Shown piece after piece: positions 19,945-54,269 of a stretch of 64,000 nt of DNA; the first letter of the stretch is position 1; each line of letters begins with the position of its first letter. The stretch spans positions 299,952-363,951 of the forward strand of contig CDRNVI010000047.1 in assembly GCA_977017575.1 (NCBI GenBank). The letters are read 5' to 3'. Under the pieces are notes generated by a model, which saw only the letters and a list, made by a program, of their open reading frames with translations, searched no databases and had not been told where the DNA came from. The position numbers were made by a program, and so were the translations under genes. The stretch comes from Paramoeba atlantica. Taxonomy: Eukaryota > Protista > Discosea.

Positions 19945-22094
19945 TATTTCAACTTAGAAGTCACACATGCTGTGCTCTTCGCGTTGAAAACTACCACCGT
20001 GTTTAACGAAGAAACTAAAAAAGAAAATTTAGCCTGGAAAGCTGAAGAAAATTGAAATATTATAGCCAAAAATAGCCGAATTTCGGGTAAAAATGGGGTC
20101 ATTTTTGGGTATTTTTGCTCTCAAAGCACTAAATCCGACATTTTCTCGTGGGAAATCACTCGTAGGCAGGAATGACAGCCTACCGAACGTATTGGGTAGA
20201 GAATGCGACTCCAACCATACCATTTTTTCGACACAAAAAGGCCCCTTGGGGTCCGAAAAATACTTGTTCACCTTTTTTGGTCAAAAATGGGTCATTTTGG
20301 GAAGTATACCACGGCTACAAAAAAGGGATACCTTGCGAAAACAAGTAGAAAGCTAGTGTAGGTCCCAAACTAACAAAATACAATAGGGAAAGGATTTTGA
20401 AAAAAAATATTTTTTTTACCTTTTTCCGCCAAGTTGATTTTTTTTCAAATTTCTTTTTTCGAAAAAATCCGAACTTGGCGGACCCGTCCTGCGGGTACGC
20501 GGAGCCTACCGAACGTATTGGGTAGAGAATGCGACTCCAACCATACCATTTTTTCGACCCAAAAAGACCCCTTTGGGTCCGAAAAATACTTTTTGGCATT
20601 TTTTAGTCAAACATGGGTCATTTTCACAGGCATATCACGGAGAAAACAACTGCGGAGAAAGCTAGCATAGGTCCCAAACTCTCAAAATACAATTGGGGAA
20701 ATGATTTTGGAAAAATATTTTTTTGCCATTTTTTTCGCCAAGTTGAATTTTTTTTCAATTTTTTTTCCGAAAAAATCCGAACTTGGCGGGCCCGTCCTGC
20801 GGATACGAAGGGGGCTTTCGTGCGGTATGCCCCCCCCATGGACCCCCTCCTAGACCCTCCATTTTTTTCAAATTTTTTTTTCAATTTTGGACCACCGAAG
20901 CCCCCTTTAATTTCTTTTTTAGGCTCCTCGCTAAACACGGTGGTTGTTTTCAACTTAGAAGTCACTCATGCTGCGCGCTTCGCGTCGAAAACTACCACCG
21001 CGTTAAACGAAGAGCCTAAAAAAGAAAAATCTCCAAAAGATCATGAATAATCTGGGGGGTAAATGCTCGATTTTTCGGCAAAAATTGCGAAATTTTACAC
21101 CGAATTTGGGCCCTTTTTGATGCCTTCCCAGTAGGGGCAGGAGGCGGTTCTGTCGAAAAAACGTCCTATAATGGTAGCTGAGGTCCAAAACTCTTAAAAT
21201 ACGTTTTAGGAGTCGATTTTGGAAAAATAATATTTTTACTTTTTTTTGGGTCAAAAAATATTCTTTTTGGTCATCCCAAAAATTTCGGAAATTTTGACCT
21301 TGTCGGACCCCTCCCGCGCGTGCCAGGGGGGGTACCCCCAGGGGGGTGGAAAATTATCGCCGCGGCCTACTCTACCACTTCCCTGCGCTCGATTTTGAAA
21401 AGCAAAAAATTCGAAAAAAAAATTTCGCGACGTATGCCCCCCCCATGGACCGCCCCCCCTGGACCCCCCCTGGACCCCATTTTTTTGAATTTTGTTTTTC
21501 AGTTTTGGACCACCCGGGCCCCCTTTTATATTTTTTCTTCTCTTATATTACTGTGTTCCTCTTTATATTTTCACTGTTTTTGTTCACTTTTTTTGCAATA
21601 ATCGAGGGTAGAGCGGTAGTTGCGGTGGTTGTATAACTACCGCTCTACCCTCGATTATTGCAAAAAAAGTGAACAAAAACAGTGAAAATATAAAGAGGAA
21701 CACAGTAATATAATAGAAGAAAAAATTGCGGTGGTTGTAAAATTTTTGGGAGGACCAAAAAGATTTTTTTTTGACCCAAAAAAAAGCAAAAATATTATTT
21801 TTCCAAAATCGGCTTCTAAACCGTATTTGGAGAGTTTGGGACCTCAGCTACCATTCTACTCCTTTTTTTTCATCAGATTCGCCTCCTGCTCTTCCTGGGA
21901 AGGTATCCAAAACACCCCAAAATTGGGTTGAAATTCCGCAATTTTTGCCAAAAAATCGAGCTTTTTCCCCCAAAACAGTAGATTATTCATGATCTTTTGG
22001 AGATTTTTCTTTTTTAGGCTCTTCGTTAAACGCGGAGGTAGTTTTCAACGCGAAGCGCACATCATGAGCGAACGCGGTGGTTGTTTTCAACTTA
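19945..22094. repeat. Cluster of rearranged copies of the cruciform-bearing repeat families
   Basis: Cruciforms near 19945-20030, 20912-21030 and 22005-22094. Reverse copies of the 0.9-kb element interior, a second subfamily also seen at 10760-10900 and 18340-18690, and a head-to-head junction at about 21620. Confidence 0.8.
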
Positions 22095-22260
22095 GAAAAA
22101 ACTTTGATGCGATGAATCGTAAGAAAAAACGGTGCTGTGGACGAATTTAAGTCGAAAATTTCTCGAAAGAAAAGTGTTTTATTTCCTTCTCCAACCTTCG
22201 AATCATGAATTCAAAATTTTAAACCAACTTTCACTTCCAAACGTCTTCTTACACACTTAT

Positions 22261-22602
22261 TCAGAAATTTAAGTATCTGTTTCTCTTCTTTTTCCCTTTG
22301 AAGTAAACGCTCGATGCGCGCTTCGCTTCTTCCGTAGTGCTAAAACACACGTGCGCCAGTCCTTTTTTTGATACGATTGTTATGCAATCGATTTCACCAT
22401 ACGAAGCGTAATGCTTGGTAAGGTCTTCTTTAGTCGTAGAGGAGGGAAGGTATTCTATTGTGATTGAGCACTCGTCACGCTCTTCGCGCGCAGAGCGCAA
22501 AACGTGTAGAGATTCTAAGTAATCATCTCTTTTGCGCTTTGTATCTCTTTTCTTGTCGGAAATGTCGTTGCCATTGGTTGATTGATTCTCCGCCGAGGCC
22601 AT
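22261..22602 (-). CDS. Small RRM-domain protein (113 aa) carried at the Helitron 3' end, copy A
   Basis: RNP2-like SITIEYLP, helix TTKEDLTKHYASYGEI and RNP1-like KGLAHVCF, with a basic C-terminus. Confidence 0.75.
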   Translation of the reverse strand: MASAENQSTNGNDISDKKRDTKRKRDDYLESLHVLRSAREERDECSITIEYLPSSTTKEDLTKHYASYGEIDCITIVSKKGLAHVCFSTTEEAKRASSVYFKGKKKRNRYLNF

Positions 22603-23094
22603 AGTAACTTCAAAGAAAGTTTTCAAAAAAATCAAGCTGAGTCTAGAAACATTCAACTTAAAAAGCAATACATGAACGTAGAAGTCTTCTTTTTGAAGGG
22701 CCTGCCCGGAGGGCCCTTCGAGAGGGTGCAGACCCGCTGCCGCGGGCGGTGCTTTACCTCGTGACGTGTAATTTTGAAGGAAACAAGCTTCTGATATCTT
22801 TTTTTGAAGGGCCCGCCCGGAGCGCCCTTCGAGAGGGTACAGGCCCGCTGCCGCGGTGGGTGCTTTTGAAGCAAACAAGCTTCTGAAATTTCGATAAAAA
22901 AAATTGAAAGCAATTTTGACGGAGCGTAATTCTGCAGCTATGATGGAGACTTTTTTTTTTGTTAGAGGGCGCGTGAGCGTTGGGGTCACTCGCACTTCTT
23001 CTGCCGAAGCTGAAGACGCCGGGCTTGTGACCGGTATCAAGCGTGCTTCCCCCCTAGAGAGGTCTTCCTAAGAAGATCGTTTCAATCTAATTTC

Positions 23095-25155
23095 TTAGAA
23101 TTGATAAGTCAAATCGGTAAGCCGATTTGCTTTTTCCATGGCCGGAAATTTAGGCCTATGGTAACCTGAAGTCAGGTGTGTTCCTGGGCGATCTGTGCCC
23201 ATGCCAGGGAGCACTCGAATATCATCGAGGCATTGTGCCCTGGATATTGCTACTGTGAGCTTGGCGAGTTCCGGTCTCTTGGACCACGCCTTATCATTCA
23301 AGTCAAGAATAACACCTTTCTTCACGGTGATACCTTGTACTTTTTGATACGTATAGGCAAATCCCAATTCCACTTGAAAGTTTCCTTAGGAAGCCTTATC
23401 ATGGTGCTGCGCCTTTTTGGCGTAAAATTCTACACCTGACCCCTTCTCAATGCATTGCATAAAAGAAGGGGCTTTTCGTAGATAACGAACACCATCAATA
23501 GTGTCGTATGACAAATCGTCTGACACAAGGTCTCTCATTTCAATCACTGTCCCATTCGCAATTTTCATTGTATAAGGAGCAATGTTCTCGGTGATTACAC
23601 CGGGTGCTCCTTTTACAAATACAGAAAATGCTTCAGGGTGTGTGTCAATGAGTTTACCTTGGACGTTATCGCCTGTCCATGCGAACAATGGGCAATTGTG
23701 ACGTCTGGCAAAATTTCTTGCGATTGCGACATTAATCTTGTGCCGTTCAATATTTGTTCCAACAATGACAATTGCATTGCGGAACTTTTCTTGGTCCTCA
23801 GAGGTAAGAGGTTTTACCAATTGGATGAACTTCTTCAACCCCTCATTGGGAGCTTTTCGAAGAAGACGCAAGATATCTGAAAATACAGTATCTTGTCGTG
23901 CTCGCATTTGCTGTTTGAGTTCAAACACATACGAGACTTGAAAAATATTCTCAAAAATGGGATTATTACCAGGAGAGCTATCTTCTATGGTAAGAGACGC
24001 TCCTTGTACTGGTATCAGCTGATAAAAATCTCCAACAAAGAGCATGTTGATGCCTCCATAGGGAAGCTGCTCATTTCCTTTGATTTGCTGCAGTCTAGTG
24101 TTGATACAGGCAAGGAAACACTTGCTGATCATTGACACTTCGTCGACTATGATTAATCGACATTTCTCATACCTTTGTTGGTATGGTAGAAGGCTACTGC
24201 TTGAAAGATGTTTCAAATTTCTTGCAGTAGCCCCTATCGGTATGCAGAGGGAAGCGTGTATTGTGCAACAGTGCAGTACTGATGCGGCGATCCCAGTGGG
24301 CGCCATTGCAATACATTGGCTTCCCAGTTCTTGCATTATGAAACGGGAAACTAGACTTTGCCCGGTTCCGGGGCCACCGAGCAGAAACATACATTTCCGC
24401 TCGGGGTCTAGTTTCCCGTTTAGTAAATCTTCAATTTGATTTACGCACTGTTTCTGTGCTTGGTTCAGTTCAATGGAATTGTTGTCTTCGCGCAATATGT
24501 AGCTGCGATCGAACGTAATCTCTTCGTATTGATTACTGCGAGCCAGTGGACGATCCTCATTAAAATGAGATCTGTCCACTGGTGCACTTGGCTCAGATTG
24601 AGCCGAAGTTACAAATCGTTCGTTTTGGATCATTTCAGCATAGCGCTCTCCCGCATTTATGACTGTCATTGTCGATGCAAGATCAACATTTTCTTCAGAG
24701 GAGTTCTCAGTAGAACCTCCTAACGCGGCCGTTAAAGCTCGCGTTTGTAGTTCGCAGTATGCATTCTGCTGAACCAATCGCTCTTCATTAACCACTGCAG
24801 TGTTCTGCTGTGCTTCAAGAGCATCTTGAAGATGAGGTTCAACCTCTCGCACTTCAAGCTCATTTTCGTACGCAATGTTGCGTGCTAATCTTGCTTCTTC
24901 CAGAGTGCAAGCATCTTTGCGTCGATACAAATTTGCCGCGTTCTCAGTATTCTTCGAAGCATTTTCAAACCCTTCTAGGGTCATTTCATGGCTCGGTGAG
25001 CCTTTCGTCCATGGGGAAAACAATACCACCATGTGTTTCGCTACTCGAAGCTGGCTTCGAGCTCGTGCCCCAGGTTCTTTTGAAGAACTCAATATGGGAA
25101 AACCTGGTATAGCTGGCGCAGTGTGCAAAGAGCGCAACTGTTGTTCAACAATATA
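23095..25155 (-). pseudogene. PIF1-family (SF1B) helicase portion of RepHel, copy A
   Basis: GGPGTGQS (Walker A Lys changed to Gln), IIVDEVSMI, GGINMLFVGDFYQLIPV, ELKQQMRA and AYTYQKVQG. In-frame TAA at 23386-88. Confidence 0.9.
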
Positions 25156-25439
25156 AAGGCTCAAATTCCGGGAGGCCTTCAATGTCCTCAAAGGCGTATC
25201 TCCCATTAGCACGACGTCCGCGACGACGTCTTCGATTTGTCCCGCACTCAAAATCTGAATCATGATCCGGCTCTTCTTGAGCTAGTTCAGCTCTTTACTT
25301 ATTTACGCTGACAATGCCTGCATAGGAGAAGAACTGCACAATCATGTTCGGTGATCATTAGAGGGGCCTCTACGATACCGTTGTCGAACTCAGAGACTTG
25401 TGACGAATCATCGTCACTGATTTCTAGTTCTGTGTGATC

Positions 25440-27711
25440 TGACTTTTTTGAAAAACATCAGCAGCACATTTGGACACATGTTCCCTGAAATAATCATCCT
25501 TTTCATCAAGAATGATATGTAGTCCTCCGCGATACATCTTTGAGTAGTCGAGCGTTGTAGGGCCGTAAAGCTCCTTACTGATCCTTTGCGCCCACTCGGG
25601 CAGATCAGCGCGCATCGTCGTACCCAAAGACTTCGCGAGACCATCGTGCTCCTTCACAATGTGAATTAATTCGGAGACGTAATGTGGACTAAGATTCGTC
25701 CATAGTACACTATGAAAGTGTAGCGCATCTCTTTTTTGGCATTCTACAACACCAAAAAATGCTCGATGGCGACCAAAGAGGCCTTCAAGAACGTCACATT
25801 CTTTCTTTACCTCATCTACGTTCGACATTCCGTACAATTCGGTAAGAAGAGTACGGATTTGCCGTTTGAAAATTCTAGTGGATCTGACAGGATACCATGG
25901 CACAAGCTCAGACCGCTTGAGAAGGTTGGCCCGCATTTCCTGCATTTTCTCGCTCTCATCATTCGTAAAGATTCTTAAATCTAGAACGTTATCGTTCATG
26001 TTTGGACTCACTGTGATCCAGTAAGTTGGCAGTCCGCATCGCCTGTATAAGGCGTAGATCTGACTTTGTGATGCCTTTCGCTTTGCTAGCGAAAAGGGTA
26101 TCGTTTTTGCGCATACTTGCACAAATGGCAGAAACTTTGTTTCCAGAAGTTTCGCTTCGGAACTGTTTGGGTTCCTTATAGCCTGTTGTACAATGTGATG
26201 GAAAGCATCAGCATTGCAAAAATTCACGAACATCTGTGCATATCTTTGTTATACTTCAGATTTTGCACTACTGCTGATGAGGCTTCGCGGCACCGAAGCA
26301 CATCGTAGCAGTAAAATATGAATCCAGCATTCTTTGCAAATCGGGAATCCGATTGCTCTAGAATTTCCTTGATTTCATATAGTTCAAACGTTGAACCCTT
26401 GAAAGGGTACTTTTGCATCAGCGTCGGAAATGCTCCGAGCAAGATGTTTTCCATGTCGGTATACTCATTGAGTAAACCTTCTTTTTGTTTCAGTTGCATC
26501 GCCACGGCATGCGTAATTTGCGCACCCGCCGGCGCATTGCTTACAGGGTTGTGATCAGTTACAAAAGATCGTGTGATCTCACCGCGAGGATCGCGATGTA
26601 ACGTATCGGAAGCCACTGCTTGGGTGACCATGCTGTTTATGGCGTTTTCACCTTCCTGGGAAACAGATCTATCCCAAAGATGTGAGACAACGTCTCTACA
26701 ATGTTGTTCGGTAACAACGTTGATCTTTCCTTCCTCTTTCAGTTGAGCATACACGGTTATGCTCACAGAGGAAGTTTACCCAGGTGTTCGGAGTCCCTGA
26801 TTTCACCCCGAATATGCCACTCAGCTGTGCAGAACATAGTCTTTGACTACGCTTTATTCGCCGTTCGTTGGCTATCCAAACAATTTGGATGCTCTTAATC
26901 GCGCCCTCGAGATCCGGAACTCTTTCGAGTTGCAAGAGCTCAAGGGTTTCGCGTGCTGTAGCCGTCGCATGTCCAGTGAATTTCGTGTCTGGCCTTAAGG
27001 ATGCGGCATATGCGCCACCTTTCCTATGTACACTGATGATTGTGCAGTGTAAAAACCAAACCAACCAAATCATTCCGGATTGCTCCGGATGGTCACTGGC
27101 AAGCCAGACCCTTCACAGACAGATTTGGAAGTTCCGAGGCCGACGTCCTCTACCAGTTTCCGCTTTTCCAAGGCGGCACCAACGTGCTGTTGCCAACACG
27201 CTGCGTCGACGAACTGTACGTCAACACGGCTTACCCAAGAGGTGTAAGCCCGGTTAGGGAGCTGGTTGCCTGAGGGGAGGGTCCGGGACGGTCCTTCGAG
27301 TACTGGGACTAGTCGGTTCTCAGCCCAGCCTCTTGGAGTGAGGAATATTGCGATGAGCGGGTTTGAACTCGCCGTCTGAGCACCATGTGCTTCAAACTTT
27401 GAATTCTTGCCACTCCACCACCTCCGCTCAGTGTTAAAACACCTTTGGAAGAAGAATCTCTTCTACCAGCGTGGGTGCTGGAAGGCGATTTGTAGAAGGT
27501 TGTTCTACTGTACCTCGGGGAATTCTCCCTTTTTTGTCCATTATTCTTTGATCCTTTGCACAAAGTTGCGCTTCGGGATTCGGAATGTCACTTTCGAGAA
27601 GAAGAAGAAGAAGAAGAAGAAGAAGAAGACACTTTCGAGAAGAATAACTTTAGAAGAATCACAACTTGTGATACGTCTTCTTCTTCTTCGTCGTCGTCGT
27701 TCATTCTCTTT
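25440..27711 (-). pseudogene. Helitron Rep (HUH) region, copy A, frameshifted and SINE-interrupted
   Basis: PTYWITVSPN and VVECQKRDALHFHSVLW motifs (25424-26233). The upstream WV.FLCEHN..Y motif is typical of Helitron2 N-terminal regions. Confidence 0.85.
27057..27428 (-). mobile_element. tRNA-derived SINE-like insertion, 372 bp, 12-bp TSD
   Basis: Absent from the homologous sites at about 41445 and 47063. Flanked by cagtgtaaaaac (27045-56) and cagtgttaaaac (27429-40). The minus-strand head has an A box TGGTGGAGTGG and a B box GTTCAAACC; the tail is tttggttggtttg. Confidence 0.8.
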
Positions 27712-30700
27712 TTGTACCTTTTCATGCACTCTTCTTGAGCTTCCGTACTGACTGAAAAATCTTCCAAAGGAAGACGATCAATGTAGGAACTCTCATAGAA
27801 GTATTTGAGTGCGTCTTTTGGATCGCGCTCAATGTCAAAACGTGTTCGACGTGAGCCATCTCCATTGACTTCGTATGTGTCAAAATTGACAATACGTTTC
27901 GCGATGCAACATCGTTCAAGCCAGCACCGAAGTTCATTGGCTGAAGATTCTTTTCATATTTCGTTTGTGTGAAAGATGGTGTTTTCACACATCTGCATGA
28001 TAGCATATGCTGCACTGTCAATAGTGCTAGCATTCGTCAAATTCGTGACAGTTGCTTGATTCAAACTTGAAACAATTTCGTTTTCAAGAGAGGGACTCGA
28101 AGTAAACGTGTAAACGTTCTTTTCACCCTTCTTTTTCAAGGAAGAAGACGTATCACAACTTGTGATATGTTGATCGTCGTTCATTCTCTTTTTGTAGAAG
28201 AGAAGAAGAAGAGAATTCTCTTCTTGTACCTTTTCATGCACTCTTCTTGAGCTTCCGTACTGACTGAAAAATCTTCCAAAGGAAGACGATCAATGTAGGA
28301 ACTCTCATAGAAGTATTTGAGTGCGTCTTTTGGATTGCGCTCAATGTCAAAACGTGTTCGACGTGAGCCATCTCCATTGACTTCGTATGTGTCAAAATTG
28401 ACAATACGTTTCGCGATGCAACATCGTTCAAGCCAGTACCGAAGTTCATTGGCTGAAGATTCTTTGCATATTTCGTTTGTGTGAAAGATGGTATTTTCAC
28501 GCATCTGCATGGTAGCATATGCTGCACTGTCAATAGTGCTAGCATTCGTCAAATTCGTGACAGTTGCTTGATTCAAAATTGAAACAATTTCGTTTTCAAG
28601 AGAGGGACTCGAAGTAAACGTGTAAACGTTCTTTTCACCCTTCTTTTTCAAGGAAGAAGACGTATCACAACTTGTGATATGTTGATCGTCGTTCATTCTC
28701 TTTTTGTAGAAGAGAAGAAGAAGAGAATTCTCTTCTTGTACCTTTTCATGCACTCTTCTTGAGCTTCCGTACTGACTGAGAAATCTTCCAAAGGAAGACG
28801 ATCAATGTAGGAACTCTCATAGAAGTATTTGAGTGCGTCTTTTTGATTGCGCTCAATGTCAAAACATGTTCGACGTGAGCCATCTCCATTGACTTCGTAT
28901 GTGTCAAAATTGACAATACGTTTCGCGATGCAACATCGTTCAAGCCAGTACCGAAGTTCATTGGCTGAAGATTCTTTGCATATTTCGTTTGTGTGAAAGA
29001 TGGTATTTTCACGCATCTGCATGGTAGCATATGCTGCACTGTCAATAGTGCTAGCATTCGTCAAATTCGTGACAGTTGCTTGATTCAAAATTGAAACAAT
29101 TTCGTTTTCAAGAGAGGGACTCGAAGTAAACGTGTAAACGTTCTTTTCACCCTTCTTTTTCAAGGAAGAAGACGTATCACAACTTGTGATATGTTGATCG
29201 TCGTTCATTCTCTTTTTGTAGAAGAGAAGAAGAAGAGAATCCTCTTCTTGTACCTTTTCATGCACTCTTCTTGAGCTTCCGTACTGACTGAGAAATCTTC
29301 CAAAGGAAGACGATCAATGTAGGAACTCTCATAGAAGTATTTGAGTGCGTCTTTTGGATTGCGCTCAATGTCAAAACGTGTTCGACGTGAGCCATCTCCA
29401 TTGACTTCGTATGTGTCAAAATTGACAATACGTTTCGCGATGCAACATCGTTCAAGCCAGTACCGAAGTTCATTGGCTGAAGATTCTTTGCATATTTCGT
29501 TTGTGTGAAAGATGGTATTTTCACGCATCTGCATGGTAGCATATGCTGCACTGTCAATAGTGCTAGCATTCGTCAAATTCGTGACAGTTGCTTGATTCAA
29601 AATTGAAACAATTTCGTTTTCAAGAGAGGGACTCGAAGTAAACGTGTAAACGTTCTTTTCACCCTTCTTTTTCAAGGAAGAAGACGTATCACAACTTGTG
29701 ATATGTTGATCGTCGTTCATTCTCTTTTTGTAGAAGAGAAGAAGAAGAGAATTCTCTTCTTGTACCTTTTCATGCACTCTTCTTGAGCTTCCGTACTGAC
29801 TGAAAAATCTTCCAAAGGAAGACGATCAATGTAGGAACTCTCATAGAAGTATTTGAGTGCGTCTTTTGGATTGCGCTCAATGTCAAAACGTGTTCGACGT
29901 GAGCCATCTCCATTGACTTCGTATGTGTCAAAATTGACAATACGTTTCGCGATGCAACATCGTTCAAGCCAGCACCGAAGTTCATTGGCTGAAGATTCTT
30001 TTCATATTTCGTTTGTGTGAAAGATGGTGTTTTCACACATCTGCATGATAGCATATGCTGCACTGTCAATAGTGCTAGCATTCGTCAAATTCGTGACAGT
30101 TGCTTGATTCAAACTTGAAACAATTTCGTTTTCAAGAGAGGGACTCGAAGTAAACGTGTAAACGTTCTTTTCACCCTTCTTTTTCAAGGAAGAAGACGTA
30201 TCACAACTTGTGATATGTTGATCGTCGTTCATTCTCTTTTTGTAGAAGAGAAGAAGAAGAGAATCCTCTTCTTGTACCTTTTCATGCACTCTTCTTGAGC
30301 TTCCGTACTGACTGAGAAATCTTCCAAAGGAAGACGATCAATGTAGGAACTCTCATAGAAGTATTTGAGTGCGTCTTTTTGATTGCGCTCAATGTCAAAA
30401 CATGTTCGACGTGAGCCATCTCCATTGACTTCGTATGTGTCAAAATTGACAATACGTTTCGCGATGCAACATCGTTCAAGCCAGCACCGAAGTTCATTGG
30501 CTGAAGATTCTTTTCATATTTCGTTTGTGTGAAAGATGGTATTTTCACGCATCTGCATGATAGCATATGTTGCACTGTCAATAGTGCTAGCATTCGTCAA
30601 ATTCGTGACAGTTGCTTGATTCAAAATTGAAACAATTTCGTTTTCAAGAGAGGGACTCGAAGTAAACGTGTAAACGTTCTTTTCACCCTTCTTTTTCAAG

Positions 30701-35426: not shown

Positions 35427-35603
35427 TGCTTTTTATAATATTTGTTCATACGCAGTCTTTTTTTTGTGTATTACTTATTTTGCTGGGACTCAGGGCTCAA
35501 CCTGACTGGCTAAAAAAAAACAAGAAAAAATTAAAAAAAATAAAAAAAATGAATGAAAAATTGTTTTGGGCGCAAGAATACCATGCAAGCAAGGTTTAAT
35601 CCT

Positions 35604-36787: not shown

Positions 36788-36856
36788 GGGTTCGCAGAAA
36801 CTATAATATAGTAAAATATAGTTTTTTTCATTGAATATAGTTACTATATAGTACTA

Positions 36857-40760: not shown

Positions 40761-40789
40761 GAATCATCGGGGCCGATATGGGTCCTTGT

Positions 40790-45112: not shown

Positions 45113-45149
45113 GCTTTGAAGAAGAAGAAGAAAAAGAAGAAGAAGGAAG

Positions 45150-46207
45150 ACTGCCTGGGTGTTCCGAAACACCTCTTGAAAAAGAGGCTATGACCAAGCA
45201 TGTAACACAACATTGCCAAGGAATGCATTTATGCATTCCTTGTAATTACTTTGCTATCTTGCAAGAATTTCCGCCAGTAATGGTGGATACGACTCACGCG
45301 AATTCTCTGAAACATCGGGAAATGGCGTATCTGCATCCTAAACGGGAGCTTCACGTAAGTTTCTCCATTGGATCGTGCTGAATGTATGTATGTGCACCCC
45401 ACGCCATACGTAAGCAAAGTGTCAAATCTATGATGCGACACATACTCAGTATGGGACACCCTTCACAGGTGCCCCCGACTGATACGAATGTTCCTGTGTG
45501 CGAAGTATGTGCGTATTTCGCACAGATTCGGGGAACAACGGGTATTATCCCAGCAGATGAATACCATTTGTTATCAAGCGAGCATACACGTTATGTTCAA
45601 ACAAAAGTCGACTGGATCGAATTTGCCCTCCCCTGCGAACAGAACAAGTTCAAGTGCACTTTGTGCGCTACCGAACAAATGTTCACGTTTAAGGGGCTTC
45701 AAAAGCATTTTTACCGTCATCCGCGGCATACTGAAGCTCGGGCTTTCCGACTTCGAATCACACAAGCTGAGCGTAACAGAGTTCATGCAATATCACAGGA
45801 TGATGAGCTGGAACGTGTGAAGCAATGCTCCACGCTAACGCTCACATCTTTTCAACTGATTGAGAATATTCTCATCAATTCACACATTGTTTGTGATGAA
45901 ATCCTCCAAAACGATGGAGATAAAAGATGCTCTATTCAGAGATATCATGATGGACATAACGTCGTTTACGTCAAAGGCAATGGCGATACTCTCGCCATGG
46001 TATGTCTGACTAAACGACGAGTGTTCACATACAATTGCACATCTTCTATGGAAACACAGATAGCGGCAATTCGAACAGTCTACAATATTGGAAGCATGGC
46101 TACTACGCCAGTTCCTTTAGTAGGAAACGATGAAGTTGAGCTCACCCTTGGAGCCATAGCCTACACTATCACGCAAGACCGTGATTGGCCGAAACGGACA
46201 GAACGTG
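45150..46207 (+). pseudogene. Internal fragment of the zinc-finger gene (retains modules missing from 38589-40760)
   Basis: KHVTQHCQGMHLCIPCNYF, MMRHILSMGH..CEVCAYF and KCTLC..KHFYRH. Truncated by a MITE. Confidence 0.75.
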
Positions 46208-46413
46208 ACCCAGGTTGAAGGGGACGAGGGAGATACCAATAGTGCAAGTGCGGCAGTTTCCCTCGGGAAAAACGGCATCTCCACCTTTTTCGGAGCCTTG
46301 CCTTCATGCCATAAGGGAGATACCGTATTTCCTGTGGGAAACTGTCGCACCTACACTATTGGTATCGCCCTCGTCCCCTTCGACCTGGGTTACATAGTCA
46401 AAACATGTTCCCT
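46208..46413. mobile_element. Long-TIR MITE family, copy 3
   Basis: acccaggttgaaggggacgagggagataccaatagt ... actattggtatcgccctcgtccccttcgacctgggttacatagtc, related to the 13551-13768 TIRs. Confidence 0.7.
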
Positions 46414-46495
46414 CTGGAAAATTGGGGTTTGCAAATCGCTTTGCAAAAAAAAGAGGGGGCGCTCGAGTGGTCCTAAAGGTGCGTTTTTTTCTCCT

Positions 46496-49400
46496 GCAAC
46501 TGTCACGAATGTGACGAATGCTAGCACTATTGACAGTGCAGCATATGCTAGATGTGTGAAAATACCATCTTTCACACAAACGAAATATGAAAAGAATCTT
46601 CAGCCAATGAACTTCGGTGCTGGCTTGAACGATGTTGCATCGCGAAACGTATTGTCAATTTTGACACATACGAAGTCAATGGAGATGGCTCACGTCGAAC
46701 ACGTTTTGACATTGAGCGCAATCCAAAAGACGCACTCAAATACTTCTATGAGACTTCCTACATTGATCGTCTTCCTTTGGAAGATTTTTCAGTCAGTACG
46801 GAAGCTCAAGAAGAGTGCATGAAAAGGTACAAAAAGAGAATGAACGACGATCAACGTATCGCAAGTTGTGATACAAGTTGTGATTCTTGTAAAGTTATTC
46901 TTCTCGAAAGTGACATTCCGAATCCCGAAGCGCAACTTTGTGCAAGGGATCAAAGAATAATGGACAAAAAAGGGAGAATTCCACGCGGTCCAGTAGAACA
47001 ACCTTCTACAAATCACCTTCCAGTACCCACGCTGGTAGAAGAGATCCTTCTTCAAAAGGTGTTTTTACACTGCACAATCATCAGTGTATATAGGAAAGGT
47101 GGCGCATATGCCGCATCCTTAAGGCCGGACACGAAATTCACTGGATATGCGACGGCTACAGCACGCGAAACCCTTGAGCTCTTGCAACTCGAAAGAGTTC
47201 CTGATCTCGAGGGCGCGATTAAGAACATCCAAATTGTTTGGATAGCCAACGAACGGAGAACGAAACGTAGTCAAAGACTATGTTCTGCACATCTGAGTGG
47301 CATATTCGGGGTGAAATCAGAGACTCCGAACACCTGGGTACACTTCCTCTGTGAGCATAACCACGTGTATGCTCAACTGAAAGAGGAAGGAAAGATCAAC
47401 GTTGTTACCGAGCAACATTGTAGAGACGTTGTCTCACATCTTTGGGATAGATCTGTTTCCCAGGAAGGTGAAAACGCCATAAACAGTATGGTCACCCAAG
47501 CAGTGGCTTCCGATACGTTACATCGCGATCCTCGCGGTGAGATCACATGATCTTTTGTAACTGATCACAGCCCTGTAAGCAATGCGCCGGCGGGTGCGCA
47601 AATTACGCATGCCGTGGCGATGCAACTGAAACAAAAAGAAGGTTTACTCAATGAGTATACCGACATGGAAAACATCTTGCTCGGAGCATTTCCGACGCTG
47701 ATGCAAAAGTACCCTTTTAAGGGTTCAACGTTTGAACTATATGAAATCAAGGAAATTCTAGAGCAATCGGATTCCCGATTTGCAAAGAATGCTGGATTCA
47801 TATTTTACTGCTACGATGTGCTTCGGCGCCGTGCAGTCTCATCAGCAGTAGTGCAAAATCTGAAGTATAACAAAGATACGCACAGATGTTCGTGAATTTT
47901 TGCAATGCTGATGCTTTCCATCACATTGTACAACAGGCTATAAGGAACCCAAACAGTTCCGAGGCGAAACTTCTGGAAACAAAGTTTCTGCCATTTGTGC
48001 AAGTATGCGCAAAAACGATACCCTTTTCGCCAGCAAAGCGAAAGGCATCACAAAGTCAGATCTACGACTTATACAGGCGATGCGGACTGCCAACTTACTG
48101 GATCACAGTGAGTCCAAACATGAACGATAACGTTCTAGATTTAAGAATCTTTACGAATGATGAGAGCGAGAAAATGCAGGAAATGCGGGCCAACCTTCTC
48201 AAGCGGTCTGAGCTTGTGCCATGGTATCCTGTCAGATCCACTAGAATTTTCAAACGGCAAATCCGTACTCTTCTTACCGAATTGTACGGAATGTCGAACG
48301 TAGATGAGGTAAAGAAAGAATGTGACGTTCTTGAAGGCCTCTTTGGTCGCCATCGAGCATTTTTTGGTGTTGTAGAATGCCAAAAAAGAGATGCTCTACA
48401 CTTTCATAGTGTACTATGGACGAATCTGAGTCCACATTACGTCTCCGAATTAATTCACATTGTGAAGGAGCACGATGGTCTCGCGAAGTCTTTGGGTACG
48501 ACGATGCTCGCTGATCTGCCCGAGTGGGCGCAAAGGATCAGTAAGGAGCTTTACGGCCCCGCAACGCTAGACTACTCAAAGATGTATCGCGGAGGACTAC
48601 ATATTATTCCTGATGAAAAGGATGATTATTTCAGGGAACATGTGTCCAAATGTGCTGCTGATGTTCAGAAGCACGTTGGTCACAGACCCATGTGTTTCAA
48701 AATGAATGTAAATATAAACAAGAACAAATGCCGATATGGCATTCCATCCGTACTTCATGAAAATGAAACGGAAGTTCGAGAAGTTGAGGTTCAGATGGAT
48801 GAATCTGGACAACCGGAATTCCGGTTCAAGCCTCCAACACGGCCGATTAAAAATGACACCATTTGGCCAGTACTTGATGAACGGTCTCTGATTGTGCTTC
48901 TGCGCAATAACCAGGGCCCGACACAAGACACTAATTGGGGATCCATAAAATTCCGTTCCATAAAATGAAACACTCACTGCTTGCGTAAGATGCAATACAT
49001 GTGTAGTAGCGAAGGCCCCGGCGTCGTTAGTGGGAAGCAATTTGCGAAGCCCATGTGTCCAAATGTGCTGCTGATGTTCAGCAGCACGTTGGTCACAGAC
49101 CCATGTGTTTCAAAATGAAAGCCGAAGGGGTGGTATGGCGAGGGCCCGCGTGAGCGGGCCTGGGCCATACGCGGCGTCGTTAGTGGGAAGGAATTTGCGA
49201 AGCCCCGTTTGACAACAACCCCCGCTTTTTAACGAAGCAGCTAGCACACCGACATGAGCAAGGACATTGGTCCACCTGTGTACATTGTACCAGCACTTCG
49301 CGTAGCCAATGGCCACCTCCAAAGGTGCTCTGAATTCAGAGCACAGAGTGCAAACTGACATTCCGATGGCACGCTTAGTTTTACAGAAATTGTCGAACAT

Positions 49401-50195
49401 GACACATCGAAAGATGGAAGTTTCAATCGAAATGGCAACTGCCTTTTGTCTCGGCCAACCCTCCGAGTACATGAGCCATAGCTTCACATGGATCAATATG
49501 GACCGTGTAATGAAGTTCCTGGCAAATATCTCAAGTGAGTCAGATCACAGAGATCTAGAAATCAGTGACGATGATTCGTCACAAGACTCTGATATGGAGT
49601 TCGACAACGGTATCTTAGAGGCTCCTCTAATGATCACCGAACATGATTGTGCAGTTATTGCACCACTCCATGTGCGTTACATGCACAGGGGCGAAGATCT
49701 TCAAGACCTTGACCTGTATTCCTATGCAGGCATTGTCAGCGTAAAGAAGAAAAGAGCTGAACTAGCTCAAGAAGAGCCCGATCATGATTCAGATTTTGAG
49801 TCAGGGACAAATCGAAGACGTCGTCGCGGACGTCGTGCTAATGGGAGATACGCCTTTGAGGAAATTGAAGGCCTCCCGGAATTTGAGCCTGGAGATATTG
49901 TTGAGCAACAGGTGCGCTCTTTGCACACTGTGCCAGCTATACCAGTTTTTCCCATATTGAGTTCTTCAAAAGAACCTGGGGCACGAGCTCGAAGCCATCT
50001 TCGAGTAGCGAAACACATGGTGGCATTGTTTTCCCCATGGACGAAAGGCTCACCGAGCCATGAAATGACCCTAGAAGGGTTTGAAAAGCTTCTCAATGAA
50101 GCGAAAATAAATACGCCTGGAAAGTATGACATAATGTGCAACTTTCTTCGGCTTTTACATGCTTCGAAGAATACAGAGAACGTTGTGTACAGAGA
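46496..50195 (+). mobile_element. Helitron2-like Rep region, copy C (direct repeat of 40878-44467, offset 5618 bp)
   Basis: Near-identical ORFs offset by exactly 5618 bp (41159/46777, 43691/49309). Confidence 0.9.
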
Positions 50196-50702
50196 ACATT
50201 GTGAAGGAGCACGATGGTCTCGCGAAGTCTTTGGGTACGACGATGCTCGCTGATCTGCCCGAGTGGGCGCAAAGGATCAGTAAGGAGCTTTACGGCCCTA
50301 CAACGCTCGACTACTCAAAGATGTATCGCGGAGGACTACATATCATTCTTGATGAAAAGGATGATTATTTCAGGGAACATGTGTCCAAATGTGCTGCTGA
50401 TGTTTTTCAAAAAAGTCAGATCACACAGAACTAGAAATCAGTGACGATGATTCGTCACAAGTCTCTGAGTTCGACAACGGTATCGTAGAGGCCCCTCTAA
50501 TGATCACCGAACATGATTGTGCAGTTCTTCTCCTATGCAGGCATTGTCAGCGTAAATAAGTAAAGAGCTGAACTAGCTCAAGAAGAGCCGGATCATGATT
50601 CAGATTTTGAGTGCGGGACAAATCGAAGACGTCGTCGCGGACGTCGTGCTAATGGGAGATACGCCTTTGAGGACATTGAAGGCCTCCCGGAATTTGAGCC
50701 TT

Positions 50703-52763
50703 TATATTGTTGAACAACAGTTGCGCTCTTTGCACACTGCGCCAGCTATACCAGGTTTTCCCATATTGAGTTCTTCAAAAGAACCTGGGGCACGAGCTCG
50801 AAGCCAGCTTCGAGTAGCGAAACACATGGTGGTATTGTTTTCCCCATGGACGAAAGGCTCACCGAGCCATGAAATGACCCTAGAAGGGTTTGAAAATGCT
50901 TCGAAGAATACTGAGAACGCGGCAAATTTGTATCGACGCAAAGATGCTTGCACTCTGGAAGAAGCAAGATTAGCACGCAACATTGCGTACGAAAATGAGC
51001 TTGAAGTGCGAGAGGTTGAACCTCATCTTCAAGATGCTCTTGAAGCACAGCAGAACACTGCAGTGGTTAATGAAGAGCGATTGGTTCAGCAGAATGCATA
51101 CTGCGAACTACAAACGCGAGCTTTAACGGCCGCGTTAGGAGGTTCTACTGAGAACTCCTCTGAAGAAAATGTTGATCTTGCATCGACAATGACAGTCATA
51201 AATGCGGGAGAGCGCTATGCTGAAATGATCCAAAACGAACGATTTGTAACTTCGGCTCAATCTGAGCCAAGTGCACCGGTGGACAGAGCTCATTTTAATG
51301 AGGATCGTCCACTGGCTCGCAGTAATCAATACGAAGAGATTACGTTCGATCGCAGCTACATATTGCGCGAAGACAACAATTCCATTGAACTGAACCAAGC
51401 ACAGAAACAGTGCGTAAATCAAATTGAAGATTTACTAAACGGGAAACTAGACCCCGAGCGGAAATGTATGTTTCTGCTCGGTGGCCCCGGAACCGGGAAA
51501 AGTCTAGTTTCCCGTTTCATAATGCAAGAACTGGGAAGCCAATGTATTGCAATGGCGCCCACTGGGATCGCCGCATCAGTACTGCACTGTTGCACAATAC
51601 ACGCTTCCCTCTGCATACCGATAGGGGCTACTGCAAGAAATTTGAAACATCTTTCAAGCAGTAGCCTTCTACCATACCAACAAAGGTATGAGAAATGTCG
51701 ATTAATCATAGTCGACGAAGTGTCAATGATCAGCAAGTGTTTCCTTGCCTGTATCAACACTAGACTGCAGCAAATCAAAGGAAATGAGCAGCTTCCCTAT
51801 GGAGGCATCAACATGCTCTTTGTTGGAGATTTTTATCAGCTGATACCAGTACAAGGAGCGTCTCTTACCATAGAAGATAGCTCTCCTGGTAATAATCCCA
51901 TTTTTGAGAATATTTTTCAAGTCTCGTATGTGTTTGAACTCAAACAGCAAATGCGAGCACGACAAGATACTGTATTTTCAGATATCTTGCGTCTTCTTCG
52001 AAAAGCTCCCAATGAGGGGTTGAAGAAGTTCATCCAATTGGTAAAACCTCTTACCTCTGAGGACCAAGAAAAGTTCCGCAATGCAATTGTCATTGTTGGA
52101 ACAAATATTGAACGGCACAAGATTAATGTCGCAATCGCAAGAAATTTTGCCAGACGTCACAATTGCCCATTGTTCGCATGGACAGGCGATAACGTCCAAG
52201 GTAAACTCATTGACACACACCCTGAAGCATTTTCTGTATTTGTAAAAGGAGCACCCGGTGTAATCACCGAGAACATTGCTCCTTATACAATGAAAATTGC
52301 GAATGGGACAGTGATTGAAATGAGAGACCTTGTGTCAGACGATTTGTCATACGACACTATTGATGGTGTTCGTTATCTACGAAAAGCCCCTTCTTTTATG
52401 CAATGCATTGAGAAGGGGTCAGGTGTAGAATTTTACGCCAAAAAGGCGCAGCACCATGATAAGGCTTCCTAAGGAAACTTTCAAGTGGAATTGGGATTTG
52501 CCTATACGTATCACAAAGTACAAGGTATCACCGTGAAGAAAGGTGTTATTCTTGACTTGAATGATAAGGCGTGGTCCAAGAGACCGGAACTCGCCAAGCT
52601 CACAGTAGCAATATCCAGGGCACAATGCCTCGATGATATTCGAGTGCTCCCTGGCATGGGCACAGATCGCCCAGGAACACACCTGACTTCAGGTTACCAT
52701 AGGCCTAAATTTCCGGCCATGGAAAAAGCAAATCGGCTTACCGATTTGACTTATCAATTCTAA
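50703..52763 (+). pseudogene. PIF1-family helicase portion of RepHel, copy D
   Basis: GGPGTGKS, IIVDEVSMI, GDFYQLIPV, AYTYHKVQG and VAISRA motifs. Single in-frame TAA at 52470-72. Confidence 0.9.
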
Positions 52764-53255
52764 GAAATTAGATTGAAACGATCTTCTTAGGAAGACCTCT
52801 CTAGGGGGGAAGCACGCTTGATACCGGTCACAAGCCCGGCGTCTTCAGCTTCGGCAGAAGAAGTGCGAGTGACCCCAACGCTCACGCGCCCTCTACCAAA
52901 AAAAAATGTCCCCATCATGGCTGCAGAATTACGCTCCGTCAAAATTGCTTTCAATTTTTTTTATCGAAATTTCAGAAGCTTGTTTGCTTCAAAAGCACCC
53001 ACCGCGGCAGCGGGCCTGTACCCTCTCGAAGGGCGCTCCGGGCGGGCCCTTCAAAAAAAGATATCAGAAGCTTGTTTCCTTCAAAATTACATGTCACGAG
53101 GTAAAGCACCCCCCGCGGCAGCGGGTCTGCACCCTCTCGAAGGGCCCTCCGGGCAGGCCCTTCAAAAACAAGACTTCTACGTTCATGTATTGCTTTTTAA
53201 GTTGAATGTTTCTAGACTCAGCTTGATTTTTTTAAAAACTTTCTTTGAAGTTACT

Positions 53256-53597
53256 ATGGCCTCGGCGGAGAATCAATCAACCAATGGCAACGACATTTCC
53301 GACAAGAAAAGAGATACAAAGCGCAAAAGAGATGATTACTTAGAATCTCTACACGTTTTGCGCTCTGCGCGCGAAGAGCGTGACGAGTGCTCAATCACAA
53401 TAGAATACCTTCCCTCCTCTACGACTAAAGAAGACCTTACCAAGCATTACGCTTCGTATGGTGAAATCGATTGCATAACAATCGTATCAAAAAAAGGACT
53501 GGCGCACGTGTGTTTTAGCACTACGGAAGAAGCGAAGCGCGCATCGAGCGTTTACTTCAAAGGGAAAAAGAAGAGAAACAGATACTTAAATTTCTGA
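53256..53597 (+). CDS. Small RRM-domain protein (113 aa), copy D
   Basis: Same protein sequence as 22261-22602. Confidence 0.75.
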   Translation: MASAENQSTNGNDISDKKRDTKRKRDDYLESLHVLRSAREERDECSITIEYLPSSTTKEDLTKHYASYGEIDCITIVSKKGLAHVCFSTTEEAKRASSVYFKGKKKRNRYLNF

Positions 53598-54269
53598 ATA
53601 AGTGTGTAAGAAGACGTTTGGAAGTGAAAGTTGGTTTAAAATTTTGAATTCATGATTCGAAGGTTGGAGAAGGAAATAAAACACTTTTCTTTCGAGAAAT
53701 TTTCGGCTTAAATTCGTCCACAGCACCGTTTTTTCTTACGATTCATCGCATCAAAGTTTTTCTGTGGTTTTACTTTGTGTCTCGGAAACCCTCTGTAAGT
53801 ATTTGTAACTTCGCATTTTCTAAAATCAAATAAATACAATTGAAACTAAATTTGTTAAAAAAATGTTTACATTTACATAGCAGATCTACATTTGCAGTCA
53901 TCACTTCTTCTATTTTTAGCCTGATCATTCAACAAATATGCTTTTGATGACTGAATTAGTGCATATCCAACGTACTGTCAGAAAAGCGTTCCGACATGGC
54001 ATTAACTGCACCCCTGGCGTAAACCAAATGAATCAAAACGAAGAAGTAAACCCACGAGGTAAATCCCCCCCCCTTCAAAAGCCGGGGTGAATTCAAGGGC
54101 CTTTCAAAAAAAGAGGTCTCCACCCTGCTTCGTTCAAAATCGTGCGAACCGAAGGAAAACACATGTGAGCGGAAATATGCAAAAACAACCCTATTTTTGC
54201 CCAACTATCGGCTCTTTTTGGACCAAATCCAGAATTATCCCTCTGGTCTTTTACTCTCCTGTCAAATAT

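What the first reader, a model, noticed from the sequence alone, without database searches (positions are those of the whole stretch)
22094..53763. Large Helitron2/Helentron-like element with a three-gene layout: multi-zinc-finger gene, RepHel, RRM gene
Seen: Rep HUH motifs (PTYWITVSPN; ECQKRDALHFHSVLW) and a full PIF1 motif set. Piecing copies B, C and D together gives about 5.6 kb of RepHel coding sequence. In three places the zinc-finger gene lies upstream of RepHel on the same strand (35604-36787, 38589-40760, 45150-46207), and in both 3' copies the same RRM gene follows. Both zinc-finger 5' ends follow a 0.9-kb repeat cut inside its cruciform (38460; about 19945). Copy A's RRM end runs straight into the missing cruciform half (ctaagttgaaaacaaccaccgcg, 22070-22095). 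Known: Helitrons capture genes, and some carry RPA-like ssDNA-binding accessory genes. Inference: one ~10-kb autonomous element whose ends are the 0.9-kb family and whose accessory proteins are a ZnF array and an RRM. I have not seen this combination described.
Basis: partly seen in the sequence, partly recalled or inferred. Interest (0 to 1): 0.8.

Follow-up and report, generated by a model that had tools for sequence, protein, structure and literature searches.

The report
Helitron2-type transposon with RRM gene
The window holds three broken copies of a real rolling-circle (Helitron2-type) jumping gene; an intact 12.9-kb copy elsewhere shows that the "zinc-finger gene" is the front of one giant 2965-residue transposase, and that a small RRM protein gene always follows it, a pairing I did not find in the papers I could search.

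Summary
Rep (HUH), DUF6570, PIF1 and RRM_1 are all present, and the order zinc fingers, RepHel, RRM recurs at seven or more other loci with unrelated flanks. The linkage is therefore not a local duplication.

The interpretation needs three corrections:
- **Zinc fingers are not a separate gene.** In the intact copy (G000:C43:151115-163974, 12,860 bp) the zinc-finger array and RepHel form one 2965-aa ORF. The element has two ORFs, not three genes.
- **The element is longer than stated.** Copy D ends at 54713, not 53763. It ends in a 47-bp-stem hairpin.
- **All window copies are dead.** Each lacks the catalytic tyrosine motif.

The ends fit the Helitron2/HLE2 type:
- a 5' mini-hairpin whose first 11 bases are inverted inside the 3' hairpin;
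- insertion between T and T with no duplication, shown by one empty site;
- DUF6570 present and no endonuclease.

The 0.9-kb family is the element's deletion derivative.

The 113-aa RRM gene comes in at least three types about 50% identical. Synonymous sites between them are saturated, so the protein is under purifying selection. Full-length relatives exist only in this organism. Its role (binding single-stranded DNA or RNA) is inferred.

Earlier notes of this scan had already flagged the 0.9-kb family and "giant Helitrons" on other DNA of this genome.

The parts
36859..36880 (+). 5' terminus of copy C: a 22-nt mini-hairpin. Its first 11 nt are the inverted repeat of a stretch inside the right arm of the 3' hairpin (asymmetric terminal inverted repeat).
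   Evidence: The same 22-mer, always preceded by TT, occurs at 30+ junctions. DNA fold -7.9 kcal/mol, z -6.8.
36859..38460 (+). 5' leader of copy C: two 0.9-kb-like units. Unit 1 ends after the left hairpin arm (37685). Unit 2 ends in the hairpin loop (38460). Neither keeps a right arm.
   Evidence: The 50-nt unit1/unit2 junction is identical in C43, C41, C52 and the window, and occurs only there. The loop/ATCCTC junction is identical in the same four loci.
38589..45117 (+). Copy C, remains of ORF1: zinc-finger array 38589-40760, DUF6570 41159-41932, Rep 42274-43350. The copy is cut off just after the Walker A box (45086-45109).
   Evidence: Pfam; comparison with the intact C43 copy; motif scan. 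Broken by frameshifts.
43390..43635 (+). About 235-bp insert that replaces the codons for the catalytic tyrosine motif (QYLIKY in the intact copy). The same lesion is in copy D, in the unaligned stretch 49008-49253.
   Evidence: Alignment to C43. No YLIKY-type motif in any frame of the window.
45150..54713 (+). Copy D: 5'-truncated inside the zinc-finger array and internally rearranged (duplication 49720-50092 / 50531-50902), with an intact 3' end.
   Evidence: Self-BLAST; comparison with C43; 3' end located.
50595..52763 (+). PIF1-type helicase part of ORF1 in copy D, up to the ORF1 stop. One internal stop at 52470-52472.
   Evidence: Pfam PIF1 E 4e-25; ORF list; 99% identical to the C43 protein with 1 TAA.
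53256..53597 (+). ORF2 of copy D: 113-aa RRM protein (long N-terminal helix plus RRM).
   Evidence: Pfam RRM_1 28.1 bits against a cut-off of 20.7. Intact in 9 copies. Model and Foldseek hits are all RRMs.
54592..54713 (+). 3' terminal hairpin of copy D (about 47-bp stem, 29-nt loop) with an A-rich tail.
   Evidence: DNA fold -45.7 kcal/mol, z -10.8. The same structure ends the C43, C41 and C52 copies, followed by unrelated flanks.
22003..36787 (-). It is 5'-truncated, lacks about 1.5 kb between Rep and helicase, and lacks about 0.9 kb before the 3' hairpin.
   Evidence: Self-BLAST; Pfam; junction read; 3' end.
18652..20500 (-). Older 5' fragment of the family (84% identical): a 0.9-kb-like unit cut near the hairpin loop, followed by the start of the zinc-finger region.
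2834..3737 (+). Complete 0.9-kb non-autonomous copy with both termini.
11169..12077 (+). 0.9-kb non-autonomous copy for which paralogous empty sites exist. It sits between ...CTT and TATTATT..., with no target duplication.
   Evidence: L035, L036, L037.

Best explanation
This is a family of Helitron2-type (HLE2, endonuclease-less) rolling-circle transposons. The full unit is 12.86 kb and is intact at G000:C43:151115-163974. It has five parts. (1) A 5' mini-hairpin end. (2) A 1.67-kb leader made of two degenerate 0.9-kb units that have lost the right hairpin arm. (3) ORF1, 2965 aa: about 18 CCHH zinc fingers in 89-aa modules, an orphan middle region, DUF6570, a HUH/two-tyrosine Rep and a PIF1 helicase. 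(4) ORF2, 113 aa, a small RRM protein that starts 495 bp after the ORF1 stop. (5) A 1.3-kb tail ending in a hairpin with a 47-bp stem. By analogy with Helraiser, ORF1 would nick the top strand at the 5' end, unwind 5'-to-3', and use the 3' hairpin as the stop signal. The zinc-finger N-terminus would be the DNA-binding part. The element lands between two Ts without a target duplication. The 0.9-kb repeats are its non-autonomous deletion derivatives. They keep both ends and often sit head to tail. The window holds three dead, rearranged copies (A/B, C, D). The RRM gene is a long-standing gene of the element itself. Its role is inferred (about 35% for this specific role): it binds the single-stranded DNA intermediate or the hairpin ends, as RPA-like and SSB-like genes are thought to do in other Helitrons. 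Binding the element's own RNA is the alternative.
For: Shown:
- Domains.
- One 2975-codon frame in C43.
- HUH, QYLIKY, Walker A and Walker B motifs.
- Three copies 99.6-99.7% identical with unrelated flanks on both sides.
- Identical internal leader junctions in four loci.
- 5' and 3' hairpins fold far better than shuffles.
- TT precedes 30+ 5' ends.
- Empty site with T|T insertion and no duplication.
- DUF6570 is reported as almost exclusive to HLE2, and T|T insertion plus asymmetric terminal inverted repeats as HLE2 traits: PMC11417382, PMC5148889.
- The best foreign hit is an endonuclease-bearing Helentron.
- The RRM ORF is intact in 9 copies.
- It is RRM_1 by Pfam in types 1 and 2.
- It is an RRM by fold.
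- Three RRM types are about 50% identical, with pS 0.78-0.95 against pN 0.34-0.46.
- The type-2 RRM sits between a 92%-identical helicase and spacer on one side and a 91%-identical 3' hairpin on the other in the C62 copy.
- The Helraiser N-terminus with a zinc-finger-like motif is required for ssDNA binding and cleavage: PMC4778049.
Against: - There is no RNA or protein evidence, and no circular junction or polymorphic insertion was examined.
- Only one empty site was recovered. The C43 copy's flanks did not reconstruct a simple empty site.
- Placement in the HLE2 clade was not tested with a reference tree.
- The RRM lacks most canonical aromatic RNP residues (RNP2 reads ITIEHL, RNP1 reads KGLAHVCF). 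The model shows no clear fourth strand. It may therefore bind protein rather than nucleic acid.
- The zinc-finger module has no Pfam match, and its model is of low confidence with no structural match.
- Several RRM-family fragments lie away from any helicase hit (C37, C71, C56, C157). I could not fetch most of them.
Confidence: 0.8

Rival explanations
1. The RRM gene is a passenger: a host gene captured once near the 3' end and carried along, with no part in transposition.
For: Helitrons are known for gene capture, and HELIANO lists 20 recurrent extra domains of unknown use. The RRM sits in the 3' region, where read-through capture occurs. Generic RRM proteins are the only distant relatives.
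Against: At least three types about 50% identical have saturated synonymous sites but pN of only 0.34-0.46. All keep the same extra N-terminal helix and the same place behind the helicase. Full-length relatives occur only in this organism. The nearest RRM ORFs without an adjacent helicase match reach only 30-38% identity.
Confidence: 0.15
2. Three separate genes: the zinc-finger array is its own cistron, cut from a polycistronic RNA by trans-splicing.
For: In every window copy the zinc-finger ORFs are separate from the Rep ORFs. Earlier notes say this genome trans-splices a leader (not tested here). A second family on C88 has its zinc-finger ORF in another frame from RepHel.
Against: The youngest intact copy has no stop in 2975 codons across the supposed gene boundary. 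Its two near-identical sisters each differ by a single frame break, at different places. The window copies and the C88 copy are plainly degenerate.
Confidence: 0.07
3. The 0.9-kb units upstream are not part of the element. Instead the element inserts site-specifically into the hairpin loop of resident 0.9-kb elements.
For: The coding part starts right after a unit cut in its loop in four loci. HUH nucleases of other replicons nick in hairpin loops (general knowledge). Copy A also has a breakpoint in the loop.
Against: The whole upstream composite, including an odd unit1/unit2 junction, is identical in all four loci and absent elsewhere. DNA further upstream is unrelated between loci. The missing right arm does not follow the element. 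The element ends in its own complete hairpin, then unrelated DNA.
Confidence: 0.06
4. The linkage of zinc fingers, RepHel and RRM is only a product of local segmental duplication in this window.
For: Copies C and D share 3.6 kb at 99.5%, and A and D share 3.6 kb at 99.6%. Several contig pairs in the assembly look like duplicates of each other (C34/C82, C21/C32, C109/C20).
Against: The same order and spacing occur on C43, C41, C52, C34/C82, C21/C32 and C109/C20 with different flanking DNA.
Confidence: 0.02

Closest known systems
Helitron2 elements (Chlamydomonas Helitron2; Fusarium FoHeli1/2)
   Same: RepHel without an endonuclease, an asymmetric terminal inverted repeat, hairpins at both ends with the 3' inverted repeat about 30-40 bp from the end, no 5'-TC/CTRR-3', landing next to T, and short non-autonomous partners (PMC5148889).
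   Different: Twice the size (12.9 kb against 5-11 kb). The 3' hairpin stem is about 47 bp rather than short. The transposase is 2965 aa with about 18 N-terminal fingers. There is an extra RRM gene. The leader is built from two disabled copies of the element's own short derivative.
Helentrons and their DINE-1/HINE derivatives
   Same: T|T insertion, a variable 3' tail, internal tandem repeats, abundant short derivatives and tandem arrays (PMC4067079, as listed and cited in the passage read). The nearest foreign protein hit carries DUF6570, Rep, PIF1 and Exo_endo_phos.
   Different: No apurinic/apyrimidinic endonuclease domain in ORF1, so it is not a Helentron in the strict sense.
Plant and animal Helitrons with RPA-like or Ssb-like_OB accessory genes
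   Same: A small single-strand-binding type protein encoded beside RepHel on the same strand (PMC4683698 abstract; PMC11417382).
   Different: The fold here is an RRM, not an OB fold. RRM is not among the extra domains named in the HELIANO text. No paper with both 'Helitron' and 'RRM' describes such a gene.
Helraiser (bat Helitron1) transposase
   Same: An N-terminal domain with a zinc-finger-like motif ahead of HUH Rep and an SF1 helicase. That N-terminus is needed for ssDNA binding and cleavage (PMC4778049).
   Different: Only the helicase aligns by sequence (E 2e-7). Helraiser has one zinc-finger-like motif in 489 aa, whereas this protein has about 18 fingers in about 890 aa. The end structure and target also differ (TC...CTAG between A and T).

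Membership tests
Helitron superfamily (rolling-circle transposons) | One protein with a HUH Rep nuclease, two catalytic tyrosines and a PIF1-type SF1 helicase | tested here: met
   Helitron_like_N 76 bits, PIF1 88 bits. LHFHSVLW, QYLIKYMSK, GGPGTGKS and IIVDEVSM in the C43 ORF. The window copies lack the tyrosine motif.
Helitron superfamily (rolling-circle transposons) | Insertion without target-site duplication | tested here: met
   One filled site against three paralogous empty sites.
Helitron2 / HLE2 | Asymmetric terminal inverted repeat: the 5' end is inverted at a subterminal 3' position | tested here: met
   The 5' GCGGTGGTTGT matches ACAACCACCGC in the right arm, about 30-35 nt from the 3' end.
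Helitron2 / HLE2 | Hairpins at the termini | tested here: met
   5' hairpin z -6.8; 3' hairpin z -9 to -13.
Helitron2 / HLE2 | Insertion at T|T (or T|C) | tested here: met
   The empty site reads ...CTT^TATT.... TT precedes all 30+ 5' ends. Only one empty site was found.
Helitron2 / HLE2 | Rep and Hel fall in the HLE2 clade in a reference phylogeny | not tested
   No HLE1/HLE2 reference set was at hand. Indirect evidence: DUF6570 present, which HELIANO reports as almost exclusive to HLE2; the best foreign hit is a Helentron; Helraiser is matched only weakly.
Helentron (strict sense) | Apurinic/apyrimidinic endonuclease domain in the transposase | tested here: not met
   No Exo_endo_phos hit in the 2975-aa frame at E <= 0.1.
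Helitron1 (canonical) | 5'-TC ... CTRR-3' ends, short hairpin 10-12 nt from the end, A|T target | tested here: not met
   The ends are GCGG... and ...GAGCCTA(A-rich tail), and the target is T|T.
RRM (RNA recognition motif) proteins | RRM_1 profile match and beta-alpha-beta-beta-alpha-beta fold with RNP1/RNP2 | tested here: inconclusive
   Pfam match above cut-off in two types (27.5 and 26.8 bits against 20.7). Foldseek's top 50 hits are all RRMs (E from 3e-4). However, no fourth strand is modelled, and the RNP aromatic residues are mostly replaced (sequence reading).
C2H2-type zinc fingers | Cx2C...Hx3-5H ligand set in a beta-beta-alpha fold | tested here: inconclusive
   18 CCHH motifs. All eight ligands are invariant across modules 32-53% identical. 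There is no Pfam family. The Atlas gives only leads below 0.9. Model pLDDT is 68 with no structural match.

The most novel reading that the evidence does not exclude
The RRM protein is a lineage-specific cofactor encoded by the element. It takes the place of the RPA/SSB-type accessory proteins of other Helitrons by coating or recognising the single-stranded hairpin ends. Its cassette-like divergence (about 50% identity between types, while the neighbouring helicase stays about 92% identical) would then mark subfamily specificity or a conflict with the host.
Probability: 0.25. Interest if true: 0.7.

Novelty: new variant of a known kind. Interest (0 to 1): 0.55.

Why it matters
**A possibly live element.** Very few Helitrons are known as possibly live, complete units. 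Here an uninterrupted 2965-aa transposase gene sits in a copy that has two sisters 99.6-99.7% identical to it. The ends are clear and a matching non-autonomous family exists, so the Helitron2 mechanism could be tested.

**Two unreported features, as far as I could search.** One is a conserved RRM gene behind the helicase. The other is an 18-finger array fused to the transposase. The finger array enlarges the DNA-binding N-terminus that Helraiser needs for cleavage. The RRM offers a non-OB candidate for handling the single-stranded intermediate.

**The host group.** Earlier notes of this scan call the host a kinetoplastid-like, leader-trans-splicing protist. I did not verify this. If it is right, it contrasts with published statements that Helitron transposases are absent from kinetoplastids (PMC8788227) and that trypanosomatids lack DNA transposons (PMC12278014).

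Tried and rejected
- **Empty site for the intact C43 copy.** Both flanks are themselves repeats. Other copies of the 5' flank repeat continue with sequence unlike the C43 3' flank, so no simple empty site could be rebuilt.
- **Allelic copy of the window's left part.** None was found.
- **Tandem Repeats Finder.** At score 200 it missed the 512-bp array because the period is above its limit. Self-BLAST shows the array.
- **Rfam on the C43 locus.** No known RNA family lies inside the element.
- **ARAGORN on 26800-27700.** No tRNA was found where another note sees a tRNA-derived SINE. This is weak evidence either way.
- **Zinc-finger array against PDB sequences.** Only a non-significant resemblance to the second half of GATA fingers (E 0.06). 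I treat it as chance.
- **Zinc-finger module fold.** Confidence was low and there was no structural match.
- **N-terminal 1339 aa.** The word search found no relative. The Atlas gave only weak C2H2-like leads for the fingers and nothing for residues 890-1339.
- **RRM relatives in JGI metagenome contigs.** None.
- **The ENA contigs carrying P0001 and P0004-P0009.** All come from one sample (ERZ24900291) and match copies of this genome, so they are not independent.
- **More divergent RRM loci** (C157, C54, C45, C56, C51, C19).
- **Complex prediction.** Not run, because I do not claim that ORF1 and ORF2 bind each other.
- **Organism.** I did not establish it. 'Kinetoplastid-like' is taken from earlier notes.


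Full report
**1. What is in the window**

- Helitron_like_N is found in ORFs at 25424-26233(-), 42274-43350(+) and 47886-48968(+).
- DUF6570 is at 41159-41932 and 46777-47550.
- PIF1 is at 23386-25263(-) and 50595-52472(+).
- RRM_1 is at 22261-23040(-) and 52818-53597(+).

A self-comparison shows that the region consists of three partial copies, not one element.

It carries several lesions:
  - A 512-bp piece of its own coding region (equivalent to 40790-41300) has been amplified 14 times, at 27703-34752.
  - About 1.5 kb between Rep and helicase is missing.
  - About 0.9 kb before the 3' hairpin is missing.
- **Copy C**, 36859-45117, has a complete 5' end. It stops just after the Walker A box.
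- **Copy D**, 45150-54713, starts inside the zinc-finger region. It carries an internal duplication and has a complete 3' end.
- **An older 5' fragment** (84% identical) lies at 18652-20500(-).

**2. The linkage is genome-wide**

I searched the whole 45.7-Mb assembly with the helicase, the RRM region and the zinc-finger region. The three parts occur in the same order, on the same strand, within 10-13 kb on contigs C43, C41, C52, C34/C82, C21/C32 and C109/C20. C62/C50 carries helicase plus RRM. The slashed pairs share flanks and may be duplicate contigs, so I count each pair once. C43, C41 and C52 are 99.6-99.7% identical over about 10 kb, yet have unrelated DNA on both sides.

**3. An intact copy redefines the gene layout**

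In the C43 copy a single frame of 2975 codons runs from the zinc fingers to the end of the helicase. From its first Met the protein is 2965 aa. By position in the protein it contains:
- 18 CCHH motifs between residues 41 and 885;
- an orphan stretch;
- DUF6570 at about 1350-1475;
- Helitron_like_N at about 1601-1821, with LHFHSVLW at 1815;
- the two-tyrosine motif QYLIKYMSK at 2030;
- PIF1 from about 2509, with GGPGTGKS and IIVDEVSM.

No endonuclease, OTU or RPA domain is found.

The two sister copies each carry one frame break, at different places. The "zinc-finger gene" is thus the N-terminal domain of the transposase.

The fingers come in 89-aa modules that pair a Cx2Cx21Hx3H motif with a Cx2Cx17Hx5H motif. 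All eight ligands are invariant across modules that are only 32-53% identical. They match no Pfam family. A module model is of low confidence and has no structural match. Their finger class therefore stays open.

Helraiser offers a precedent for the design. Its N-terminal 489 aa, which hold a zinc-finger-like motif, are required for ssDNA binding and cleavage (PMC4778049).

**4. The window copies are dead**

In copies C and D an insert of about 235 bp replaces the codons for IKIMQYLIKY, and copy A has the region deleted. No frame of the window encodes the tyrosine motif.

**5. The ends**

*The 3' end.* All complete copies end in a palindrome with a stem of about 47 bp and a 29-nt loop, followed by a short A-rich tail and then unrelated DNA. 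As single-stranded DNA it folds at -39 to -50 kcal/mol, z -9 to -13.

*The 5' end.* It is a 22-nt mini-hairpin (z -6.8). Its first 11 bases are the inverted repeat of a stretch in the right arm of the 3' palindrome, that is, an asymmetric terminal inverted repeat.

*The leader.* Between the 5' end and the ORF1 start lie two 0.9-kb-like units. The first is cut after the left arm and the second is cut in the loop. The 50-nt junction between them is identical in C43, C41, C52 and the window, and is found nowhere else in the fetched DNA. The loop/ATCCTC junction shows the same pattern. The whole 1.67-kb leader therefore moves with the element. Because neither internal unit keeps a right arm, only the true 3' end can fold.

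*Relation to the 0.9-kb family.* That family (for example 2834-3737) has the same 5' end and the same 3' hairpin. It equals the element with everything between the first left arm and the last loop removed. It is the non-autonomous deletion derivative, often found head to tail.

**6. The target**

TT precedes every one of more than 30 5' ends. For the 0.9-kb copy at 11169-12077, three paralogous copies of the flanking repeat provide empty sites. The element sits between ...GAAACTT and TATTATT..., with no duplication.

**7. Classification**

Published traits of Helitron2/HLE2 are:
- asymmetric terminal inverted repeats with hairpins (PMC5148889);
- insertion at T|T (PMC5148889; PMC11417382);
- DUF6570 almost exclusive to HLE2 (PMC11417382).

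All three are met here. The endonuclease that defines Helentrons is absent, and the canonical TC/CTRR ends are absent.

Among 5.8 billion clustered proteins, the only non-self hits are a Helentron (36% identity over 13% of the query) and one more distant RepHel. Helraiser aligns only in the helicase. I did not build a reference tree, so clade membership is inferred rather than shown.

**8. The RRM gene**

ORF2 starts 495 bp after the ORF1 stop. The spacer between them holds two 111-bp repeats. ORF2 encodes 113 aa: a long N-terminal helix followed by an RRM.

*Evidence that it is an RRM.* Pfam RRM_1 scores 27.5 bits against a cut-off of 20.7. The model has pLDDT 73. Every one of the top 50 Foldseek hits is an RRM. 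On the other hand, the RNP aromatic residues are mostly replaced and no fourth strand is modelled.

*Evidence that it is a conserved gene of the element.*
- The ORF is intact in nine copies.
- Two further types, about 50% identical, exist: type 2 at L023:7875 and L025:8124, and type 3 at L025:8748.
- Between types, synonymous sites are saturated (pS 0.78-0.95) while pN is 0.34-0.46, so the protein has been under purifying selection for a long time.
- In the C62 copy the type-2 gene lies between a helicase and spacer 92% identical to C43 on one side and a 3' hairpin 91% identical on the other. The RRM behaves as an exchangeable cassette inside an otherwise conserved element.

*Relatives.* A profile search of 1.84 billion representative proteins finds full-length relatives in five clusters. 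I traced four of them (P0004, P0005, P0006, P0009), and all come from one ENA sample whose contigs match copies of this genome; the fifth (P0016, 88 aa) I did not trace. Every other hit is a generic multi-RRM protein matched only in the RRM core.

*Literature.* "RRM" and "zinc" do not occur in the HELIANO text that lists 20 recurrent Helitron domains. None of the 15 listed of the 19 papers holding both "Helitron" and "RRM" looks, by title and abstract, to describe such a gene.

**9. How it most likely works**

Shown: the parts list, the ends, the target and the conservation.

Inferred by analogy with Helraiser:
- ORF1 nicks the top strand at the 5' end and unwinds toward the 3' hairpin, which signals the second cut.
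- The finger array supplies end recognition.
- Short derivatives are moved in trans.
- Head-to-tail arrays arise from missed termination, or from landing in the terminal TT of a resident copy.

The RRM role is the weakest step. I put about 35% on binding of the single-stranded DNA intermediate or the hairpin ends. The other candidates are binding of the element's own RNA and a protein-contact role.

**10. Limits**

- There are no expression data.
- Only one empty site was recovered.
- There is no reference phylogeny.
- The host's identity is taken from earlier notes, not tested here.
The intact C43 copy made that unnecessary.

Noticed in passing
window 56319-63986 (-): Five tandem ORFs of about 400 aa, each a strong DUF4249 match (checked ORFs: E 1.5e-44 and 2e-41), next to a CarboxypepD_reg/MG2-like ORF. 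This is a bacterial-looking family in tandem on a protist contig.
   Followed up: no
L019:9215-9414 (equivalent to window about 52970-53170); arrays at G000:C99:10826-12775, C56:359270-360213, C83:248982-249478, C38:114308-114804: The 111/112-bp GC-hairpin repeat in the ORF1-ORF2 spacer is the unit of satellite arrays elsewhere. The C99 array lies just 3' of a different 2130-aa Helitron ORF.
   Followed up: partly
L024 (G000:C88:15001-25000): A second, distant Helitron family (DUF6570 plus Helitron_like_N, about 24% identical) has its own upstream ORF with three 50-aa repeats of a Cx2Cx10-12Hx5H finger, with weak AKAP95/matrin-type hits. Finger arrays ahead of RepHel may be a wider habit in this genome.
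   Followed up: partly
window 43350-43917, 48968-49535 and 55292-55859 (-): A 568-bp block recurs inverted 6 kb downstream at 99% identity. It overlaps the insert that destroyed the catalytic tyrosine motif in copies C and D.
   Followed up: partly
G000:C19:299779-300801: A possible fourth RRM type (34% identical, open 122-aa frame) lies 370 bp after a homolog of the ORF1 3' end and spacer. It could not be fetched.
   Followed up: no
L002:7844-8559 (G000:C43:165844-166559): A cluster of five tRNA genes plus a tRNA-Sec match, 1.9 kb beyond the 3' end of the intact C43 copy.
   Followed up: no
L019:9037-9501: The frame upstream of the RRM start codon is open for 155 codons, in frame with ORF1 after two stops, in all type-1 copies (268 aa stop to stop). 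It is not open in type 2 (131 aa). This is either chance in GC-rich repeats or a longer isoform.
   Followed up: partly
window 27045-27440: Another note reads this as a tRNA-derived SINE inside copy A. ARAGORN finds no tRNA in 26800-27700.
   Followed up: partly
contig pairs C34/C82, C21/C32, C109/C20, C62/C50, C39/C40: Many loci occur twice with the same flanks but a few percent divergence. For example, the C32 RRM is 87% identical to type 1 whereas the C21 RRM is 99% identical. The pairs could be haplotigs, old segmental duplications or two subgenomes.
   Followed up: no
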